This document shows positions 10,988 to 62,426 of a stretch of DNA of 64,000 nucleotides, in pieces. Within the stretch, counting starts at the first letter, position 1. Every line of letters begins with the position of its first letter. A program made the position numbers and the translations under genes. The notes beneath the pieces are model-generated. The model was not told the origin of the DNA. It saw nothing but the letters and a program-made list of their open reading frames with translations, and made no database searches. The DNA is taken from the IMG/VR virus record IMGVR_UViG_3300040801_004532, positions 62,001 to 126,000 of that record; one strand, given 5' to 3'.

Positions 10988-11084
10988 GGGAGTGTAGCTC
11001 AATTAGGTAGAGCAGCCGACTTATGATCGGTATTTGCGCCGGATTAGCGCGAGGTTCGGGGTTCGATTCCCTGCACTCCTACCA
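10988..11084 (+). tRNA. tRNA-Ile(UAU) with long variable arm (97 nt)
   Basis: GGGAGTG/CACTCCT, GCCGA-CT-TAT-GA-TCGGT, extra GCGC-CGGATTA-GCGC hairpin, A-CCA. Confidence 0.8.
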
Positions 11085-13334: not shown

Positions 13335-13418
13335 GCGGACGTTGGAGAGTCTGGTACTCCATCAGCCTTCCAAGCTGACGCGCAAGCATCGCGGGTTCGA
13401 ATCCCGCCGTCCGCTCCA
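13335..13418 (+). tRNA. tRNA-Gly(UCC), extended variable loop
   Basis: TCAGC-CT-TCC-AA-GCTGA, 12-nt variable region, U73-CCA. Confidence 0.9.
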
Positions 13419-15070: not shown

Positions 15071-15325
15071 ATGGAGACAGAACAAAGAGGTGAGGACGAT
15101 ATTGCCCTAGATAAAGCAAGGTGGAAAAATCGTAGACGAATGGCGTGGATTTCCCTCATCTCAATGTTAATTGTAACCGGCTTAATTTTGTTTACTGACA
15201 TTGTTCCTGAATCAAGATTAACAATCCTCACAGAAGTTATTACATGGTTTTATTTTAGCTGTGCATCTATAATTGGGATGTACATGGGAGCAACAACTTG
15301 GGCAAACATAAAAGGGAATAGATGA
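15071..15325 (+). CDS. small two-TM membrane protein (possible holin)
   Basis: basic RWKNRRR followed by two TM helices. Confidence 0.5.
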   Translation: METEQRGEDDIALDKARWKNRRRMAWISLISMLIVTGLILFTDIVPESRLTILTEVITWFYFSCASIIGMYMGATTWANIKGNR

Positions 15326-15864
15326 AAGAAAACCCTGTTGAATTTGAACTAGGAGAAAATATACAAGTATCAAAGGACGAAATATTCTTTACTAAAAAGG
15401 ATACACCATCCATAGTTTTAATAAATCCGAAATATCCTCATAATGTAGGAGCAGCATTAAGAGCATGCTCTTGCTTTGGAGCAAAAAATATTATTTTCAC
15501 AGGGGACCGCGTTTCGTTGGAACCAAAGGGTGTTAAAGGATATAGGTTACCCAGAGAAGAAAGAATGAAGGGATATAGTGACGTCAAAATTATCAATGAT
15601 AACTACCCCTTCAATAGGTTTCCTAAAGATGTAGTCCCCATTGCTGTAGAAGTAAGGGATAACTCAGAAAGATTACAATATTTTGATCATCCAAGAAATG
15701 CAATATATGTATTTGGACCAGAGGATGGAAGTATTCCCCAAATAGCTTTAAAACACTGTCACAGGTTTTTATTGATACCAAGTAAGCATTGTTTGAATTT
15801 GGCTGCAGCGGTTTATCTTATTTTATACAAGAGAGCGGAACAGTGGGGGTTTCCAATAACTTGA
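15322..15864 (+). CDS. SpoU/TrmH-family RNA 2'-O-methyltransferase
   Basis: NPKYPHNVGAALR, VFGPEDGSI, IP...CLNLAAAV motifs. Confidence 0.85.
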   Translation: MKENPVEFELGENIQVSKDEIFFTKKDTPSIVLINPKYPHNVGAALRACSCFGAKNIIFTGDRVSLEPKGVKGYRLPREERMKGYSDVKIINDNYPFNRFPKDVVPIAVEVRDNSERLQYFDHPRNAIYVFGPEDGSIPQIALKHCHRFLLIPSKHCLNLAAAVYLILYKRAEQWGFPIT

Positions 15865-16030
15865 GTCTTCAAGCTAAATCCCTATATGGTCAAGCTTCGT
15901 TGGCAATAGTCCAGTGGCAACCAAGGCCAGAAATGGTGACGTAACCAATCGTCTTAAATAAGTGCTAGCTACTCAGTGAGTAAACCTGGCAAGAGGGTGG
16001 AAGGCCCTCAAAACAAAGAAAGGATCAATC

Positions 16031-16195
16031 ATGAAATGTTCATTTTGTAAAAAAGATGAATCAGAAGTGTATAAATTGATTGCTGCATCTGAAAAAGTTG
16101 CAATATGTGATCAATGTGTGCTCCAATGTCTAGATACATTAATTTACCCTGACTCAGTTATTGAAATTGATCTAGACGAAGATAATGATAAATAA
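16031..16195 (+). CDS. stand-alone ClpX C4-type zinc-binding domain (54 aa)
   Basis: manual translation MKCSFCKKDESEVYKLIAASEKVAICDQCVLQC, acidic tail; AAGGA SD. Confidence 0.8.
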   Translation: MKCSFCKKDESEVYKLIAASEKVAICDQCVLQCLDTLIYPDSVIEIDLDEDNDK

Positions 16196-16199
16196 CTAT

Positions 16200-16276
16200 G
16201 GGACTGTAGCTCAGTCAGGTAGAGCGCAAGGTTGAAGCCCTTGGCGTCGGTGGTTCAATTCCGCCCGGTCCCACCA
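16200..16276 (+). tRNA. tRNA-Phe(GAA)
   Basis: CAAGG-TT-GAA-GC-CCTTG; ACCA. Confidence 0.93.
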
Positions 16277-16302
16277 CTCTTTTGAAAATAGAAAGGTCAA
16301 AA

Positions 16303-16482
16303 ATGATAAGGATAAGGAAAAGTGAAAAATCTTATATAATTGTTTCAAGTCAGGATGTAAATTATTTAGAAGAAGAAGTTAATGTTTTTATCGAAAAAGG
16401 TTATAAACCTAAAGGTGGAATAGCTATCTCTGATGATCATGGAGATTTTTATCAAGCAATGTATAAAGAATTTAAAAGATAA
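16303..16482 (+). CDS. DUF1737-like small protein
   Basis: LEEEVNVFIEKGYKPKGGI pattern. Confidence 0.5.
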   Translation: MIRIRKSEKSYIIVSSQDVNYLEEEVNVFIEKGYKPKGGIAISDDHGDFYQAMYKEFKR

Positions 16483-16488
16483 GTAAAA

Positions 16489-16899
16489 ATGAAGACAAGA
16501 ACAAAACAAGGAACAATCAAAGGGAATAGACGAATATCTGTAAAAAACGAAAATGGTAATTGGAGTGTTCATATAGTGAAAACAAGATATGGAAAATCTA
16601 TTTGGAATCTACTTAGAGAATATATAAACAGTCTTGATATTGGAACACAATTTTCAAGACTAGACGCCAAATTAAAAATTTATTCAACATTCACTGTTGC
16701 TAAAGCAATGGTTTCAAGAGTTGGAACAGAAGATAATTACTTAAATTATTTATGTAAAGTTGGGATATTAAAAAAAGTAAAACTAGGTGTATGCGAAAAA
16801 ATACAAGATGTTCCTGAACAATTAACAGTTACAAAATTACGAGAATTGGCTACTGATCGAAACTGGAAATTATGGTTTATAAAACCTGAGGATTGGTAG
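16489..16899 (+). CDS. winged-helix-like hypothetical protein (family of 3)
   Basis: TEDNYLNYLCKVGIL...DVPEQL...WKLWF. Confidence 0.55.
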   Translation: MKTRTKQGTIKGNRRISVKNENGNWSVHIVKTRYGKSIWNLLREYINSLDIGTQFSRLDAKLKIYSTFTVAKAMVSRVGTEDNYLNYLCKVGILKKVKLGVCEKIQDVPEQLTVTKLRELATDRNWKLWFIKPEDW

Positions 16900-16901
16900 T
16901 T

Positions 16902-17225
16902 ATGAATAAACGTATAGAGAAAAGTTCTTGGAGAAGAATAAAACGATTTATAAACTCAAAAGAAATAGGTTATGTTTTTACAAGGAAGGAATTCTTATCT
17001 GAATTAAAAGAAGTTATCCCAGGAACTCTTGATACATATAGGGGTTATCTTGAGGGATTTCGTGTATTGGAAAGAGCAGGGAGAGGAAAATATAAACTAA
17101 TCCAAAAAATTCCAGAAAAAATGAACACAGCATCATTCACTTATCTAATGTCACAAGACAAATGGAAACGATGGTTTATTCCATTACAAGAACAAATAGA
17201 TAGGATGGAACATAGGTATAAATAA
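16902..17225 (+). CDS. winged-helix-like hypothetical protein (family of 3)
   Basis: TLDTYRGYLEGFRVL...KIPEKM...WKRWF. Confidence 0.55.
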   Translation: MNKRIEKSSWRRIKRFINSKEIGYVFTRKEFLSELKEVIPGTLDTYRGYLEGFRVLERAGRGKYKLIQKIPEKMNTASFTYLMSQDKWKRWFIPLQEQIDRMEHRYK

Positions 17226-17601: not shown

Positions 17602-17787
17602 ATGCTTTATGAATTTGAGTGTAAAAACTGTGGGAAAAGGTTTGAAGAAATAAGAAAGCTAAATCAAAACTCAGATAAAGCAACATGTCCTGATTGCAAA
17701 GGAGAATCAAAAAAAGTAATGTCAACATTTGGATTTAAGATCATTGGTTTTGCTTCAATCAATGGATATTCACATGCGAATAAATAA
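17602..17787 (+). CDS. FmdB-family zinc-ribbon protein
   Basis: YEFECKNCGKRFE...CPDCKG. Confidence 0.75.
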   Translation: MLYEFECKNCGKRFEEIRKLNQNSDKATCPDCKGESKKVMSTFGFKIIGFASINGYSHANK

Positions 17788-17809
17788 AAATTGCTGAGAG
17801 GAGAAATCA

Positions 17810-18007
17810 ATGGCAGCAGTTGTTGCGAGAATGCGAGAACGTTGTGTAATAATTCATCCAAAAAGAACGATTAGGGTTAAATCAAAAACATGGACCAGAA
17901 TTTTTGGTTCTCGTGAAACTTATGTTGATATTGGGGATCTATCTATTGAACCAACAGAAGATGAAATAAATCAATTTTTAGAAAGAGAAAAATTGATTCA
18001 ACTTTAA
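17810..18007 (+). CDS. hypothetical protein
   Basis: GAGGAG SD. Confidence 0.55.
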   Translation: MAAVVARMRERCVIIHPKRTIRVKSKTWTRIFGSRETYVDIGDLSIEPTEDEINQFLEREKLIQL

Positions 18008-18011
18008 ACAA

Positions 18012-18051
18012 ATCAGGGGGTCGCAGATTCGAATCCTGTCGGGGGGTTCCA
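18012..18051 (+). pseudogene. tRNA-Arg 3' half duplicate
   Basis: ATCAGGGGGTCGCAGATTCGAATCCTGTCGGGGGGTTCCA closely matches 18201-18239. Confidence 0.75.
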
Positions 18052-18107
18052 TTCATTATAATGAATGAAACTCAAATGAAATAACAAAAATAATTCATTA
18101 TAATGAA
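18052..18107. promoter_or_regulatory. two copies of the 14-bp palindrome TTCATTATAATGAA
   Basis: exact copies at 18052-18065 and 18094-18107. Confidence 0.5.
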
Positions 18108-18161
18108 AATCTAATTGAAAATAGTGGAGAATCTCTCAATGTCGAGTTATTGATGTTTAAC

Positions 18162-18239
18162 GCCCCTGTAGCTCAGCGGAATTAGAGCACCTGACTACGG
18201 ATCAGGGGGTCGCAGGTTCGAATCCTGTCAGGGGTTCCA
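18162..18239 (+). tRNA. tRNA-Arg(ACG)
   Basis: CCTGA-CT-ACG-GA-TCAGG; complete cloverleaf. Confidence 0.9.
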
Positions 18240-18254
18240 GAAAGGAGATCCTAA

Positions 18255-18452
18255 ATGGCACTTGGAATTGGTTCTGCAATGAAAGAGGATTTAGAACGTG
18301 AACAAAAAGAAAAATACGATGATGGACCATTAGCTATTTCCCCATCAATGAAAGAAGATCTTAAAAGAGATTTAGAAAGAGAAAAATTCTTATATGAAGA
18401 AACAACAACAATTGGTTCAGCAATGAAAGAAGATCTAAAAAACGAGGAATAA
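18255..18452 (+). CDS. small protein with three S(A)MKEDL repeats
   Basis: IGSAMKEDL / ISPSMKEDL / IGSAMKEDL; AGGAG SD. Confidence 0.6.
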   Translation: MALGIGSAMKEDLEREQKEKYDDGPLAISPSMKEDLKRDLEREKFLYEETTTIGSAMKEDLKNEE

Positions 18453-18455
18453 AAA

Positions 18456-19232
18456 ATGTCTGAGGAAACTCAACAAAACGGGACATCGGAAAAACCTTCT
18501 GATGCCCTAAAGGACTTATTAGATCCAACATATCCAATACTAGCAAAGTTCAAAGAATTGTGTCCTGGATCATATAAGCACTCACAAAATCTAGCATCAA
18601 TTATTGAAGGAATTGCAATTGATCTTAAACTGGATGTTACATTCATGAAGGTCGCTGCAACTTACCATGACGTTGGGAAAATGTTTAATCCTAAATATTT
18701 TTCAGAAAATCAACTTGAGGATGAAAATCCTCATGAAAAATTAGATCCAAAAATGAGCTTTCAAATTATAAGCAGACACGTTTCTGATACTGCGCTTATC
18801 CTTTTAAATGACAATAACTTTCCCCGAGAATTAATCCAAATTGCTTCTCAACATCATGGTTCATCAGTTATGAAATATTTCTTCGATAAATCAGGAATTG
18901 ACATTGATGATTATTTTCGTTATAGATCCGAAAAACCAACCTGCGTTGAAGCTGCAATTCTTATGATTTGTGATTGTATTGAAGCAAGATCTAGATCCGA
19001 AGTACAATCCGGAACGTTTGATCCTACAGAAATAATTGAATTAACTATTAACGATTTGCTAAGCGATGGTCAGTTAGATGATGTTGTAATGAGACTTGGG
19101 GATCTTCAAAAGATCAAGGATGCCCTGGCAAGGGAGTTGGAAGGATCATTCCAAAAACGAGTCGACTATCGAAAAGCAAAAGAAGAGGTAAAGAAAATCG
19201 AAGATAAAAAATCACAAACAGAAAAAGAATGA
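18456..19232 (+). CDS. HDIG-type HD-domain phosphohydrolase (soluble, PgpH/7TM-HD-like catalytic domain)
   Basis: PGSYKHS, YHDVGKM, FSENQ, II.RHV, QHHG, MICDCIEA.SR motifs. Confidence 0.85.
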   Translation: MSEETQQNGTSEKPSDALKDLLDPTYPILAKFKELCPGSYKHSQNLASIIEGIAIDLKLDVTFMKVAATYHDVGKMFNPKYFSENQLEDENPHEKLDPKMSFQIISRHVSDTALILLNDNNFPRELIQIASQHHGSSVMKYFFDKSGIDIDDYFRYRSEKPTCVEAAILMICDCIEARSRSEVQSGTFDPTEIIELTINDLLSDGQLDDVVMRLGDLQKIKDALARELEGSFQKRVDYRKAKEEVKKIEDKKSQTEKE

Positions 19233-61442: not shown

Positions 61443-62426
61443 ATGACTGAATTGGTTGACTCTTTATGGATTGAAAAGTATCGTCCTCGTAAATTAGAGG
61501 AGTTGGTTTTACCTGAAAGCTATAGAGGGGATTTTGCTAAGATAATTTCAACAGGTTCATTACCAAACCTTTTATTTTCTGGTCCTCCTGGTGGTGGCAA
61601 AACAACATTAGCCAGAGTTCTATGTTCTAAAAATGGAGTTTTATTTAATAAACATGACAATCTCCTTTCTGCAAATGGTTCGGCAAAAAGGACAAGGGGT
61701 ATTGATTATGTGGATAAAGTAATTGAACCTTTTCTAAAACATCCGCCAGCAGGCGATAAATATAAGGTTGTGTTTATTGATGAAGCAGATAAATTAACAA
61801 CAGATGGATTTGACTCGCTTAGAGCTATAATCGAAAAATATCACGTAGCATATGGGCGATTTATTTTTACTTGTAATTATATTTCAAAAATACCAGATCC
61901 TGTTCAGAGTAGGTTCATTCCTTATACCTTTTCACAAATTCCAAAAGATTTTATTTTGAAATATTGTAAGTGGATTCTTGATAGTGAAGAGATCGATTAT
62001 CACGAAGATAATATTAAGTTGGCGATTTCAAATTTATATCCTGATGTAAGAAAAATAGTCAATGCCCTACAACGAGCTTCTTGGGGTGGGAAATTAGACA
62101 TCAAAGAGTCTGATGTTATATCAAATGAAAAACGAATAATTTCTTTCATTCTTGAAATTATTAGCAATATTGAAAAAGGGCAAGACAAAAAACTTGGTGG
62201 GATTGTAAATTCAATTGTTGAAATTGTTTCAACATTAGATCTTGAATATAGGAATATTTATACTGAGTTATTCTTTTCAACAATACCTGCTCCAGCAAAA
62301 ATTGTTATAAATAAATATTCAAACGGTCATCAAAATTGTCTTGTTCCACATATGCATTTTATGGCGATGGTATTTGATATTATCAAAGCATTGCAAGGAT
62401 ATAGAAAAGCTTTAATGGGAAAGTAA
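61443..62426 (+). CDS. sliding clamp loader AAA+ subunit (RFC-S/T4 gp44-like)
   Basis: LWIEKYRP, LLFSGPPGGGKTT, IDEADKL, FIFTCN..SKI...QSR. Confidence 0.92.
   Translation: MTELVDSLWIEKYRPRKLEELVLPESYRGDFAKIISTGSLPNLLFSGPPGGGKTTLARVLCSKNGVLFNKHDNLLSANGSAKRTRGIDYVDKVIEPFLKHPPAGDKYKVVFIDEADKLTTDGFDSLRAIIEKYHVAYGRFIFTCNYISKIPDPVQSRFIPYTFSQIPKDFILKYCKWILDSEEIDYHEDNIKLAISNLYPDVRKIVNALQRASWGGKLDIKESDVISNEKRIISFILEIISNIEKGQDKKLGGIVNSIVEIVSTLDLEYRNIYTELFFSTIPAPAKIVINKYSNGHQNCLVPHMHFMAMVFDIIKALQGYRKALMGK

What the first reader, a model, noticed from the sequence alone, without database searches (positions are those of the whole stretch)
16031..16195. Stand-alone ClpX zinc-binding domain missed by the ORF track
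Seen: 54 aa, CSFC...V.KLIA....ICDQCV..C plus an acidic tail. Established: the ClpX N-terminal C4 zinc domain dimerises and binds adaptors (SspB) and substrates such as phage MuA and lambda O. Inference: a dominant-negative decoy or adaptor that rewires host ClpXP, notable next to a phage tmRNA whose tag targets ClpXP.
Basis: partly seen in the sequence, partly recalled or inferred. Interest (0 to 1): 0.65.

Follow-up and report, generated by a model that had tools for sequence, protein, structure and literature searches.

The report
Phage free-standing ClpX zinc domain
An uncultured giant phage from sediment carries a real 54-residue gene that is just the zinc-binding N-terminal domain of the bacterial unfoldase ClpX; such domain-only genes are common but untested in phages, and this one has a remodelled surface, so it may not work as a simple ClpXP decoy.

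Summary
Window 16031-16195 (+) is a 54-aa ORF with a Shine-Dalgarno site. It scores 52 bits against Pfam zf-C4_ClpX (cut-off 27). Its model superposes on E. coli ClpX ZBD crystal structures at 0.7-1.0 A. Three homologues (67-74% identity) sit in syntenic tRNA arrays of related phages, with dN/dS of 0.06-0.21, so it is a real gene.

The host record is a 248-kb jumbo-phage contig. It has no ClpX ATPase module, ClpP, SspB or SmpB, so the protein must act on host or phage partners. A ClpX N-domain mimic that alters what host ClpXP degrades is the most likely function, but this is inferred.

Two results weaken a simple decoy. The clade replaces the ligand-pocket residue equivalent to E. coli I46 with Thr (hydrophobic in 34 of 34 cellular ZBDs). 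It also rotates the helix's hydrophobic face by about 93 degrees.

The tmRNA link is weak. The tmRNA lies 9.5 kb away. ssrA recognition does not need the ZBD. None of 15 other viral records with short ZBD proteins has a tmRNA.

Free-standing ZBD proteins are already common in databases and in cultured phages, all uncharacterised. This is a new member of a known kind, of modest interest.

The parts
16018..16024 (+). Shine-Dalgarno-like site GAAAGGA, 6 nt upstream of the ATG
   Evidence: Read from the sequence. A purine-rich GAAAGGA or GAGGGG sits at the same distance in the three homologous loci.
16031..16195 (+). Gene for the 54-aa free-standing ClpX-type zinc-binding domain protein (stop codon included)
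   Evidence: ORF. Pfam PF06689 at 52.1 bits against cut-off 27. Homologues at 67-74% identity in syntenic loci. dN/dS 0.06-0.21.
16031..16144 (+). ZBD core, residues 1-38: CxxC knuckle (C3, C6), beta-hairpin 16-26, second CxxC (C26, C29), helix 27-38
   Evidence: AF2 model with pLDDT 91-93 over residues 1-30 and 81 over 31-40. Foldseek top 8 hits are all E. coli ClpX ZBD, rmsd 0.7-2.0 A over 37-38 columns, TM by target 0.70-0.86.
16145..16192 (+). Tail, residues 39-54: conserved Y-P-D then an alternating hydrophobic/acidic stretch; predicted disordered; 11 residues shorter than in the relatives
   Evidence: Alignment A1. pLDDT 64 and 51 for the last two blocks. 7 D/E in 16 residues. Homology to the relatives ends just before the stop codon.
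16200..16276 (+). tRNA-Phe (GAA), 4 nt downstream of the stop codon. In the relatives this tRNA lies upstream of the ZBD gene instead.
   Evidence: ARAGORN and Rfam. Relatives.
6211..6561 (+). Context only: phage tmRNA, tag ADDYYTEVALAA, 9.5 kb upstream in the same + strand tRNA array
   Evidence: ARAGORN. Rfam RF00023 at 141 bits. A relative keeps a tmRNA at about the same distance with tag ADDYYTEYAQAA.
15322..15864 (+). Context: upstream neighbour, SpoU-family RNA 2'-O-methyltransferase
   Evidence: Pfam PF00588, E = 8e-18.
16489..17225 (+). Context: two tandem paralogous ORFs (136 and 110 aa) that follow the ZBD gene in every relative; no family match
   Evidence: 28-29% mutual identity.
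17602..19232 (+). Context: syntenic downstream genes, Zn_ribbon_8 (17602-17787) and HD phosphohydrolase (18456-19232)
   Evidence: Pfam. Same order in the relatives.

Best explanation
SHOWN: window 16031-16195 encodes a genuine, selectively maintained 54-residue protein. It consists of one ClpX-type C4 zinc-binding domain (a treble-clef knuckle, a beta-hairpin and a helix) plus a 16-residue acidic, probably disordered tail. That tail corresponds to the acidic start of the ClpX linker.

The gene sits in the tRNA/tmRNA/RNA-repair array of an uncultured jumbo phage. The contig is 248 kb, is estimated at 79% complete, and comes from sediment. The phage has no ClpX ATPase module, ClpP, SspB or SmpB of its own.

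INFERRED: during infection the protein acts as a mimic of the host ClpX N-domain. The native N-domain is the docking site for adaptors (SspB, RssB, CpdR, trigger factor) and for N-domain-dependent substrates (lambda O, MuA, FtsZ). A free copy made in excess would either compete for a ligand that normally docks there or pair with a ClpX N-domain. Either way it would change which proteins host ClpXP degrades, for example by sparing a phage protein or an antitoxin-like host protein. Pore-recognised degrons such as the ssrA tag would be left untouched.

This clade has replaced the I46-equivalent pocket residue and turned the helix's hydrophobic stripe by about 90 degrees. Its ligand is therefore probably not the canonical SspB-XB or lambda-O type, but a lineage-specific partner.
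For: Identity:
- Pfam 52.1 bits against cut-off 27.
- Sequence matches to ClpX ZBD structures and to the N-terminus of the NCBIfam ClpX equivalogs.
- AF2 model with pLDDT above 90 over the core, matching 2DS5, 2DS6, 2DS8 and 1OVX at 0.7-2.0 A rmsd with probability 1.00.

Real gene:
- SD site.
- Three homologues in syntenic arrays on independent contigs.
- dN/dS 0.06-0.21, with dS from 1.1 to saturation.

Must use outside partners:
- No ClpP, ClpX AAA+, SmpB or SspB in the 248-kb record.
- tblastn with a full ClpX matches only the ZBD.
- The one AAA protein nearby is clamp-loader-like.

Plausibility of the mimic:
- The ZBD is the docking hot-spot for lambda O, SspB, RssB, TF and CpdR (PMC7804408).
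- Isolated ZBD binds XB peptides at nM affinity (PMC12373786).
- The N-domain is needed for MuA, FtsZ and adaptors but not for ssrA (PMC5415555).
- From my own knowledge of Wojtyra et al. 2003 (J Biol Chem 278:48981; listed as ref. 25, text not readable here): free ZBD added in trans inhibits lambda O and MuA degradation but not GFP-ssrA.

Recurrence: short ZBD-only proteins recur in many unrelated phages. This argues for a general use to phages.
Against: No experiment and no supported interaction model exist for this protein.

The canonical pocket is not conserved:
- T36 replaces the I46-equivalent (I/M/L in 34 of 34 cellular ZBDs).
- Q32 replaces a residue that is L/I/V in 28 of 34.
- A24 replaces a residue that is Y in 29 of 34.
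- A19-S20-x-K22 replaces the G-P-x-G loop (G in 34 of 34 at position 19).
- The hydrophobic moment of helix 30-38 points to 26 degrees, against 294 degrees in cellular ZBDs.

The domain may therefore have been re-used for a partner unrelated to ClpX. The host is unknown, so no host ClpX or adaptor could be compared. No RNA data show expression.
Confidence: 0.4

Rival explanations
1. The fold has been re-purposed. The ClpX-type zinc domain is used as a small protein-binding (or RNA-binding) module for a partner unrelated to ClpXP, for example a phage or host factor of the translation and RNA-repair island in which it sits.
For: Clade-specific loss of the I46-equivalent pocket residue, of Y34 and of the GPxG loop, and the rotated hydrophobic stripe. 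Constant embedding among tRNAs, tmRNA, a SpoU methylase, RtcB, a U32 peptidase-family protein, an HD protein and PTH2 in all relatives. ZBD-type fingers also occur fused to other proteins, such as cyanobacterial sigma factors, where the Pfam name turns up in PMC11119718, and the 100-170-aa viral proteins.
Against: About 50% identity to the E. coli ZBD over 38 aligned columns, with F16-equivalent, K-L-I-A and I-C-D-x-C kept. That is more conservation than a mere scaffold would need. Gene order in phage arrays of small ORFs is weak functional evidence.
Confidence: 0.3
2. It is an adaptor or tether rather than an inhibitor. The ZBD pairs with, or docks on, host ClpX, and the conserved Y-P-D / hydrophobic-acidic tail recruits a specific target for degradation.
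For: The tail segment T-L-I-Y-P-D-x-x-I-E-I-x-L is conserved in the clade, although AF2 gives it low confidence. That pattern is typical of a short linear motif that folds on binding. Tethering to the ZBD is sufficient to drive degradation in engineered systems (PMC12373786).
Against: Fifty-four residues leave little room for a substrate-binding module. The last 11 residues of the tail are dispensable: they are lost in the window's copy through the tRNA-Phe rearrangement. Native ClpX N-domains are already paired within the hexamer.
Confidence: 0.15
3. It is a non-functional remnant of a once full-length phage clpX. Other jumbo phages carry complete clpX genes.
For: Full-length ClpX is frequent on viral contigs (63 of 80 ZBD hits) and in cultured jumbo phages (Atu_ph07; Bacillus phage G with ClpP beside it).
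Against: dN/dS is well below 1 across four lineages with saturated synonymous change. The start codon and SD are conserved. There is no trace of the AAA+ module downstream or anywhere else in the record. The tail has a conserved, clade-specific sequence.
Confidence: 0.04

Closest known systems
[quoted passage not shown]
   Same: Same Pfam family (PF06689). Same CxxC-(19)-CxxC ligand spacing as most cellular ClpX. Same predicted fold (rmsd 0.7-1.0 A to the 2DS5, 2DS6 and 2DS8 crystal structures). The F16-equivalent is kept, and an acidic stretch follows the helix.
   Different: Not attached to an AAA+ module. I46-equivalent changed to Thr, L42 to Gln, Y34 to Ala, G-P-x-G loop to A-S-x-K, and E-E-E after the helix to I-Y-P. 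The hydrophobic face of the helix is rotated by about 93 degrees.
Other free-standing 'ClpX C4-type zinc finger' proteins of phages and bacteria (PHROGs 6797, 5259, 20296, 12435; Atlas clusters of 48-64 aa; Pseudomonas phage BUCT566 QUE30262.1; Escherichia phage P88 AIZ95127.1)
   Same: Domain-only architecture, small size, phage or prophage location, and no known function.
   Different: The viral examples printed nearly all keep the canonical pattern (A-G-P/N, Y/A-I-C-D-E-C, D/E-I/L-I/L). Some add an N-terminal helix (D-K-A-x-x-Y-D-x-L-L-K). The window's clade has only four members found so far and has the divergent helix surface and the Y-P-D tail.
Phage-encoded complete ClpX or ClpXP (Agrobacterium phage Atu_ph07, Bacillus phage G gp257/gp258, Sinorhizobium phage Phosso)
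   Same: Jumbo phages that carry Clp-system parts. Their ZBDs are 43-57% identical to the queries used.
   Different: Those are full unfoldases of about 420 aa, in phage G with ClpP beside it. Here only the N-domain is present, and the record has no ATPase or peptidase.
Phage inhibitors of host AAA+ proteases (T4 PinA and T7 Gp4.5 against Lon). Cited from my own knowledge, not tested here.
   Same: Proposed logic only: a small early phage protein that blunts a host ATP-dependent protease.
   Different: No sequence or fold relationship was examined, the target protease differs, and the mechanism here would be domain mimicry.

Membership tests
zf-C4_ClpX domain family (Pfam PF06689) | Score at or above the curated gathering threshold of the family HMM | tested here: met
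   52.1 bits against 27, E = 5.8e-14, model positions 2-37 of 39. Found again in the genome scan at 51.6 bits.
zf-C4_ClpX domain family (Pfam PF06689) | Four Cys zinc ligands arranged as CxxC ... CxxC | tested here: met
   C3, C6, C26 and C29 are invariant in all 38 aligned sequences. The spacing of 19 residues matches most cellular ClpX. Zinc binding itself was not measured.
zf-C4_ClpX domain family (Pfam PF06689) | Treble-clef fold: zinc knuckle, beta-hairpin, C-terminal helix | tested here: met
   The AF2 model has strands 16-20 and 23-26 and helix 27-38, with pLDDT above 90 over residues 1-30. The top 8 Foldseek hits are ClpX ZBD structures, rmsd 0.7-2.0 A. This is a prediction, not a solved structure.
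Functional ClpX N-domain (adaptor and substrate docking site) | Hydrophobic side pocket formed by F16 and I46 (E. coli numbering), used by lambda O, SspB, RssB and trigger factor | tested here: not met
   The F16-equivalent is kept (F5). The I46-equivalent is Thr in 4 of 4 clade members, against I/M/L in 34 of 34 cellular ZBDs. The neighbouring L42-equivalent is Gln. Pocket definition from PMC7804408.
Functional ClpX N-domain (adaptor and substrate docking site) | Constitutive homodimer | not testable with these tools
   Needs SEC-MALS, NMR or a crystal structure. See Tried and rejected for the computational attempt.
ClpX unfoldase (NCBIfam TIGR00382 / NF003745) | AAA+ ATPase module with IGF loop, following the N-domain | tested here: not met
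   The protein ends at residue 54. NCBIfam scores are 25-32 bits against cut-offs of 359-371. There is no ClpX-like AAA+ anywhere in the 248-kb record.
SspB-type ClpX adaptor | SspB substrate-binding domain (PF04386) plus a C-terminal XB tail | tested here: not met
   No PF04386 match in the protein or in the genome.
Known anti-phage defence or counter-defence families (PADLOC-DB) | Match to a catalogued model | tested here: not met
   No PADLOC family at E up to 1.

The most novel reading that the evidence does not exclude
This jumbo-phage lineage uses a surface-remodelled ClpX N-domain mimic as one half of a proteolysis-steering module; the other half is its own tmRNA. The mimic would soak up a lineage-specific adaptor or cap host ClpX N-domains. 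N-domain-dependent host and phage substrates would then be spared, and ClpXP capacity would be left for pore-recognised, phage-tmRNA-tagged products. That would be the first phage-encoded, domain-mimicry regulator of ClpXP. It would also give a function to the many orphan 'ClpX zinc finger' genes in phages.
Probability: 0.12. Interest if true: 0.65.

Novelty: new member of a known kind. Interest (0 to 1): 0.36.

Why it matters
ClpXP controls the stability of phage replication and transposition proteins (lambda O, MuA), antitoxins, stress regulators and tmRNA-tagged products. Phage inhibitors are known for Lon, but no natural phage regulator of ClpX by N-domain mimicry has been described in the literature I could search.

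Free-standing ClpX zinc domains turn up in many unrelated phages and prophages, and all are annotated only by domain name. Showing that even one of them binds ClpX, an adaptor or a substrate would assign a function to a whole class of small phage ORFs. It would also give a compact natural tool for switching off N-domain-dependent degradation.

This particular copy is not the best first test case. Its host is unknown and its binding surface is diverged. The canonical-looking copies in cultured Pseudomonas and E. coli phages are more tractable.

Tried and rejected
1. Homodimer prediction (complex prediction, two copies with alignment A3). The verdict was 'no answer' (score 0.29, mark 0.42). It is not used as evidence for or against dimerisation.

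2. Split-ClpX idea. A weak AAA_2 hit (17 bits) at window 61566-61847 might have been a separate ClpX ATPase. Pfam shows a generic AAA / Rad17 clamp-loader-like protein next to a RecD/Dda-like helicase. tblastn with a full ClpX finds nothing there. Rejected.

3. Pseudogene remnant. Rejected on dN/dS and on the absence of AAA+ traces.

4. General ZBD-tmRNA coupling. None of 15 other viral records with short ZBD proteins has a tmRNA over threshold. The only more distant relative of this phage that was found (51% identical portal, 59% complete) has neither a ZBD nor a tmRNA, which is uninformative. The relatives' contigs are not held for whole-record searches.

5. Host inference. The nearest cellular ZBDs (56-64% identity over about 30 aa) come from Chloroflexota, Gammaproteobacteria, Fusobacteriaceae and Lachnospiraceae, so there is no taxonomic signal. 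The nearest cultured phages by portal protein are PBS1/AR9-like, at only 26% identity.

6. Alternative genetic code. An amber-suppressor-type tRNA is present, but reading TAG as sense does not lengthen the longest frames. Table 11 was kept.

7. Structured RNA in the 166-nt spacer upstream of the gene. The fold z-score is -1.8, the spacer is not conserved in the relatives, and there is no Rfam hit. Dropped.

8. Literature. No paper on the function of a stand-alone ClpX zinc domain was found. Wojtyra 2003 and Thibault 2006 could not be opened.

9. Not run:
- The exhaustive profile search (search of protein representatives), because family scans already identified the protein. The clade size of four is therefore a lower bound from the word-indexed search only.
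- Read laying, because the only holders are DNA contigs from sediment metagenomes.

A first DNA search failed on a size limit of one base and was resent. One paper search failed on a two-letter term.

Full report
**1. The observation**

Window 16031-16195 (+) is an ATG-to-TAA frame of 54 codons. A GAAAGGA Shine-Dalgarno-like site lies at 16018-16024, 6 nt before the start.

The product scores 52.1 bits (E = 5.8e-14) against Pfam zf-C4_ClpX, whose gathering cut-off is 27 bits. The match covers residues 2-37, which is nearly the whole 39-position model. NCBIfam places the same residues on positions 7-41 of the ClpX equivalogs, at scores far below the full-length cut-offs. That is what a domain-only protein should give.

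The best solved relatives by sequence are the E. coli ClpX zinc-binding domain (ZBD) entries 2DS5, 2DS6, 2DS8 and 1OVX. An AlphaFold2 model was built on 38 aligned ZBDs (A3). Its mean pLDDT is 81.6, with 91-93 over residues 1-30. It shows a beta-hairpin (16-20, 23-26) and a helix (27-38), and the tail is of low confidence. Foldseek's top eight PDB hits are all ClpX ZBD structures: rmsd 0.7-2.0 A over 37-38 columns, TM by target 0.70-0.86, probability 1.00. The ninth hit drops to E = 1.

**2. It is a real gene**

The word-indexed protein search returns the protein itself and three homologues of 64-65 aa at 67-74% identity. They lie on independent metagenomic contigs, in the same gene order. The ZBD gene is followed by two small paralogous ORFs, tRNA-His, a Zn_ribbon_8 protein, tRNA-Arg, an HD phosphohydrolase, PTH2 and a radical-SAM protein.

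The DNA alignment shows many third-position changes with the start codon and SD kept. Nei-Gojobori dN/dS over 50 codons is 0.06-0.21, with dS from 1.1 to saturation.

The public collection already carries the product with PF06689 attached.

**3. Context**

- The window is positions 62001-126000 of a 248,136-bp IMG/VR virus record, estimated 79% complete, with GC of 35%.
- The record encodes a T4-like portal, a family-B DNA polymerase and large RNA-polymerase beta- and beta-prime-like proteins.
- The nearest cultured phages by portal protein are the PBS1/AR9 jumbo phages, at only 26% identity.
- Near-identical DNA is found only in sediment metagenomes, and no RNA run holds it.
- The first 20.7 kb of the window is a + strand array of 18 tRNAs and a tmRNA (6211-6561, tag ADDYYTEVALAA). 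It is interspersed with small ORFs and RNA-related enzymes: a SpoU methylase directly upstream of the ZBD gene, an HD protein and PTH2.
- Relatives also have RtcB and a U32-family protein in the array, and they keep a tmRNA at about the same distance (9.5 kb), with tag ADDYYTEYAQAA.
- tRNA-Phe starts 4 nt after the ZBD stop codon in the window. In the relatives it lies upstream of the gene, and there the ZBD tail is 11 residues longer and overlaps the next ORF. The extreme C-terminus is therefore dispensable.

**4. What the phage lacks**

The record has a single ZBD. It has no ClpP, no SmpB and no SspB. A full-length ClpX query matches only the 33 ZBD residues. The one weak AAA_2 hit is a clamp-loader-like AAA protein beside a RecD/Dda-like helicase.

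The record is incomplete, so absence is not proof. As far as can be seen, the protein has no phage-encoded Clp partner. It is also not a decayed clpX.

**5. How common is the architecture**

- Four PHROG families match at E up to 5e-4. Three have unknown function and one is labelled 'protease'.
- A scan of IMG/VR with the broad ZBD alignment gave 80 loci. Of these, 63 are full-length ClpX and about 15 are short proteins of 62-170 aa. The short ones include a subfamily with an N-terminal D-K-A-x-x-Y-D-x-L-L-K helix on jumbo-phage contigs.
- Cultured phages also have short ZBD proteins: Pseudomonas phage BUCT566 (65 aa, annotated as a Clp ATP-binding subunit) and Escherichia phage P88 (110 aa).
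- Atu_ph07 and Bacillus phage G carry full ClpX, the latter with ClpP beside it.
- No paper on the function of any stand-alone ZBD was found in the searchable library.

The kind is therefore known from sequence and unknown in function. This is a further member.

**6. What is unusual about this clade**

I compared column by column with 34 non-redundant cellular ClpX ZBDs fetched from bacterial genomes. All four clade members differ at positions that are nearly fixed in ClpX:

| Position in the phage protein | Clade residue | Cellular ClpX ZBDs |
|---|---|---|
| 19 | Ala | Gly in 34 of 34 |
| 20 | Ser | Pro in 28 of 34 |
| 22 | Lys | Gly in 31 of 34 |
| 24 | Ala | Tyr in 29 of 34 |
| 32 | Gln (Asp in one member) | Leu/Ile/Val in 28 of 34 |
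| 36 | Thr | Ile/Met/Leu in 34 of 34 |
| 38-40 | Ile/Val-Tyr-Pro | mostly Glu/Asp |

Position 36 aligns with E. coli I46 and position 5 with F16. [quoted passage not shown] That pocket overlaps the lambda O site and is the region bound by SspB, RssB and trigger factor (PMC7804408).

The Eisenberg hydrophobic moment of helix residues 30-38 points to 26 degrees in the clade (R = 0.99). In the cellular set it points to 294 degrees (R = 0.94), and only one of 34 cellular sequences lies near the clade's value. The exposed hydrophobic stripe has therefore moved to the other flank of the helix.

The other viral ZBD-only proteins printed nearly all keep the canonical pattern. The acidic character of the tail is not clade-specific: cellular ClpX is also Asp/Glu-rich at positions 38-45.

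**7. Mechanism**

What is shown: fold, family, selection, context, and the lack of phage Clp partners.

What is established elsewhere:
- The ZBD is the docking site for adaptors and for N-domain-dependent substrates.
- It binds ligands as an isolated domain.
- It is dispensable for direct ssrA recognition.

From my own knowledge, free ZBD in trans inhibits lambda O and MuA degradation but not GFP-ssrA (Wojtyra et al. 2003). That paper is cited but could not be opened.

My inference: the protein is an N-domain mimic that changes the substrate choice of host ClpXP. Because of the remodelled surface, it probably has a lineage-specific ligand rather than the canonical ones. I put this at about 0.4.

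The rivals are:
- The fold has been re-used for a non-Clp partner, suggested by the surface changes and the RNA-centred neighbourhood (about 0.3).
- A tethering adaptor that uses the conserved Y-P-D / hydrophobic-acidic tail (about 0.15).
- A dead remnant (about 0.04).

**8. The tmRNA link**

The tmRNA and the ZBD gene are kept about 9.5 kb apart in this lineage. That is shared ancestry of one array, not independent association. None of 15 other viral records with short ZBD proteins has a tmRNA over threshold.

Mechanistically, a ZBD decoy would not affect direct tag recognition. At most it would affect adaptor-enhanced delivery. The idea that the mimic frees ClpXP for tmRNA-tagged products is not excluded, and I give it as the novel case at low probability.

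**9. Verdict**

The functional reading is plausible in outline, but it is weakened in its specifics and untested. This is a new member of a known, uncharacterised kind. It has an unusual surface, and its interest is modest.

Noticed in passing
window 4784-4860 (+): A tRNA with anticodon CTA (amber-suppressor type; ARAGORN labels it tRNA-Pyl; 63.8 bits in Rfam). The genome nevertheless reads well under table 11. TAG ends 26 of 221 open frames of at least 150 codons, and treating TAG as sense does not lengthen the longest frames.
   Followed up: partly
window 6211-6561 versus L174/L175 70-456: The phage tmRNA tags share the first seven residues (ADDYYTE) but differ at the C-terminal end, which ClpX normally reads: VALAA in the window, YAQAA in the relative. 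The record has no SmpB gene.
   Followed up: partly
window 16193-16276; L174 9723-10198; L091 and L093 upstream of the ZBD gene: tRNA-Phe has changed sides. It lies 4 nt downstream of the ZBD stop codon in the window, and directly or closely upstream of the gene in the relatives. The rearrangement removed the last 11 codons of the ZBD tail and brought in a 66-aa ORF (16282-16482, weak DUF1737 match).
   Followed up: partly
window 10988-11084 and 13335-13418 (+): Unusually long tRNAs: tRNA-Ile(TAT) of 97 nt and tRNA-Gly(TCC) of 84 nt. Both match the whole Rfam tRNA model, so they may carry an intron or a long insertion.
   Followed up: no
window 16489-16899 and 16893-17225 (+): Two tandem ORFs (136 and 110 aa) are paralogues of each other (28-29% identity). 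They have no family match and follow the ZBD gene in every relative.
   Followed up: partly
G000:C1:155783-162880 (outside the window); G000:C1:34808-36727: The phage encodes large beta-prime-like (999 aa) and beta-like (1361 aa) multisubunit RNA polymerase proteins and a T4-like portal. The nearest cultured phages, PBS1 and AR9, are only 26% identical in the portal, so this is a deep-branching jumbo-phage lineage.
   Followed up: partly
L138, L142, L146, L166, L173 (IMG/VR contigs, match at about 3001 in each locus): A separate family of 76-92-aa viral proteins has an N-terminal D-K-A-x-x-Y-D-x-L-L-K helix fused to a canonical ClpX ZBD. Several sit on complete or near-complete records of 150-234 kb.
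   Followed up: no
L062 2728-3172 (Selenomonadaceae MAG): An open frame of about 135 codons that holds a ZBD sits immediately upstream of the genome's full-length clpX, which has its own ZBD. This is a tandem duplication of the N-domain in a bacterium.
   Followed up: no
L174 9640-9720, and the same place in L091 and L093: A conserved GC-rich inverted repeat (GCGGGAG ... CTCCCGC) precedes tRNA-Phe in the relatives and is absent from the window.
   Followed up: no
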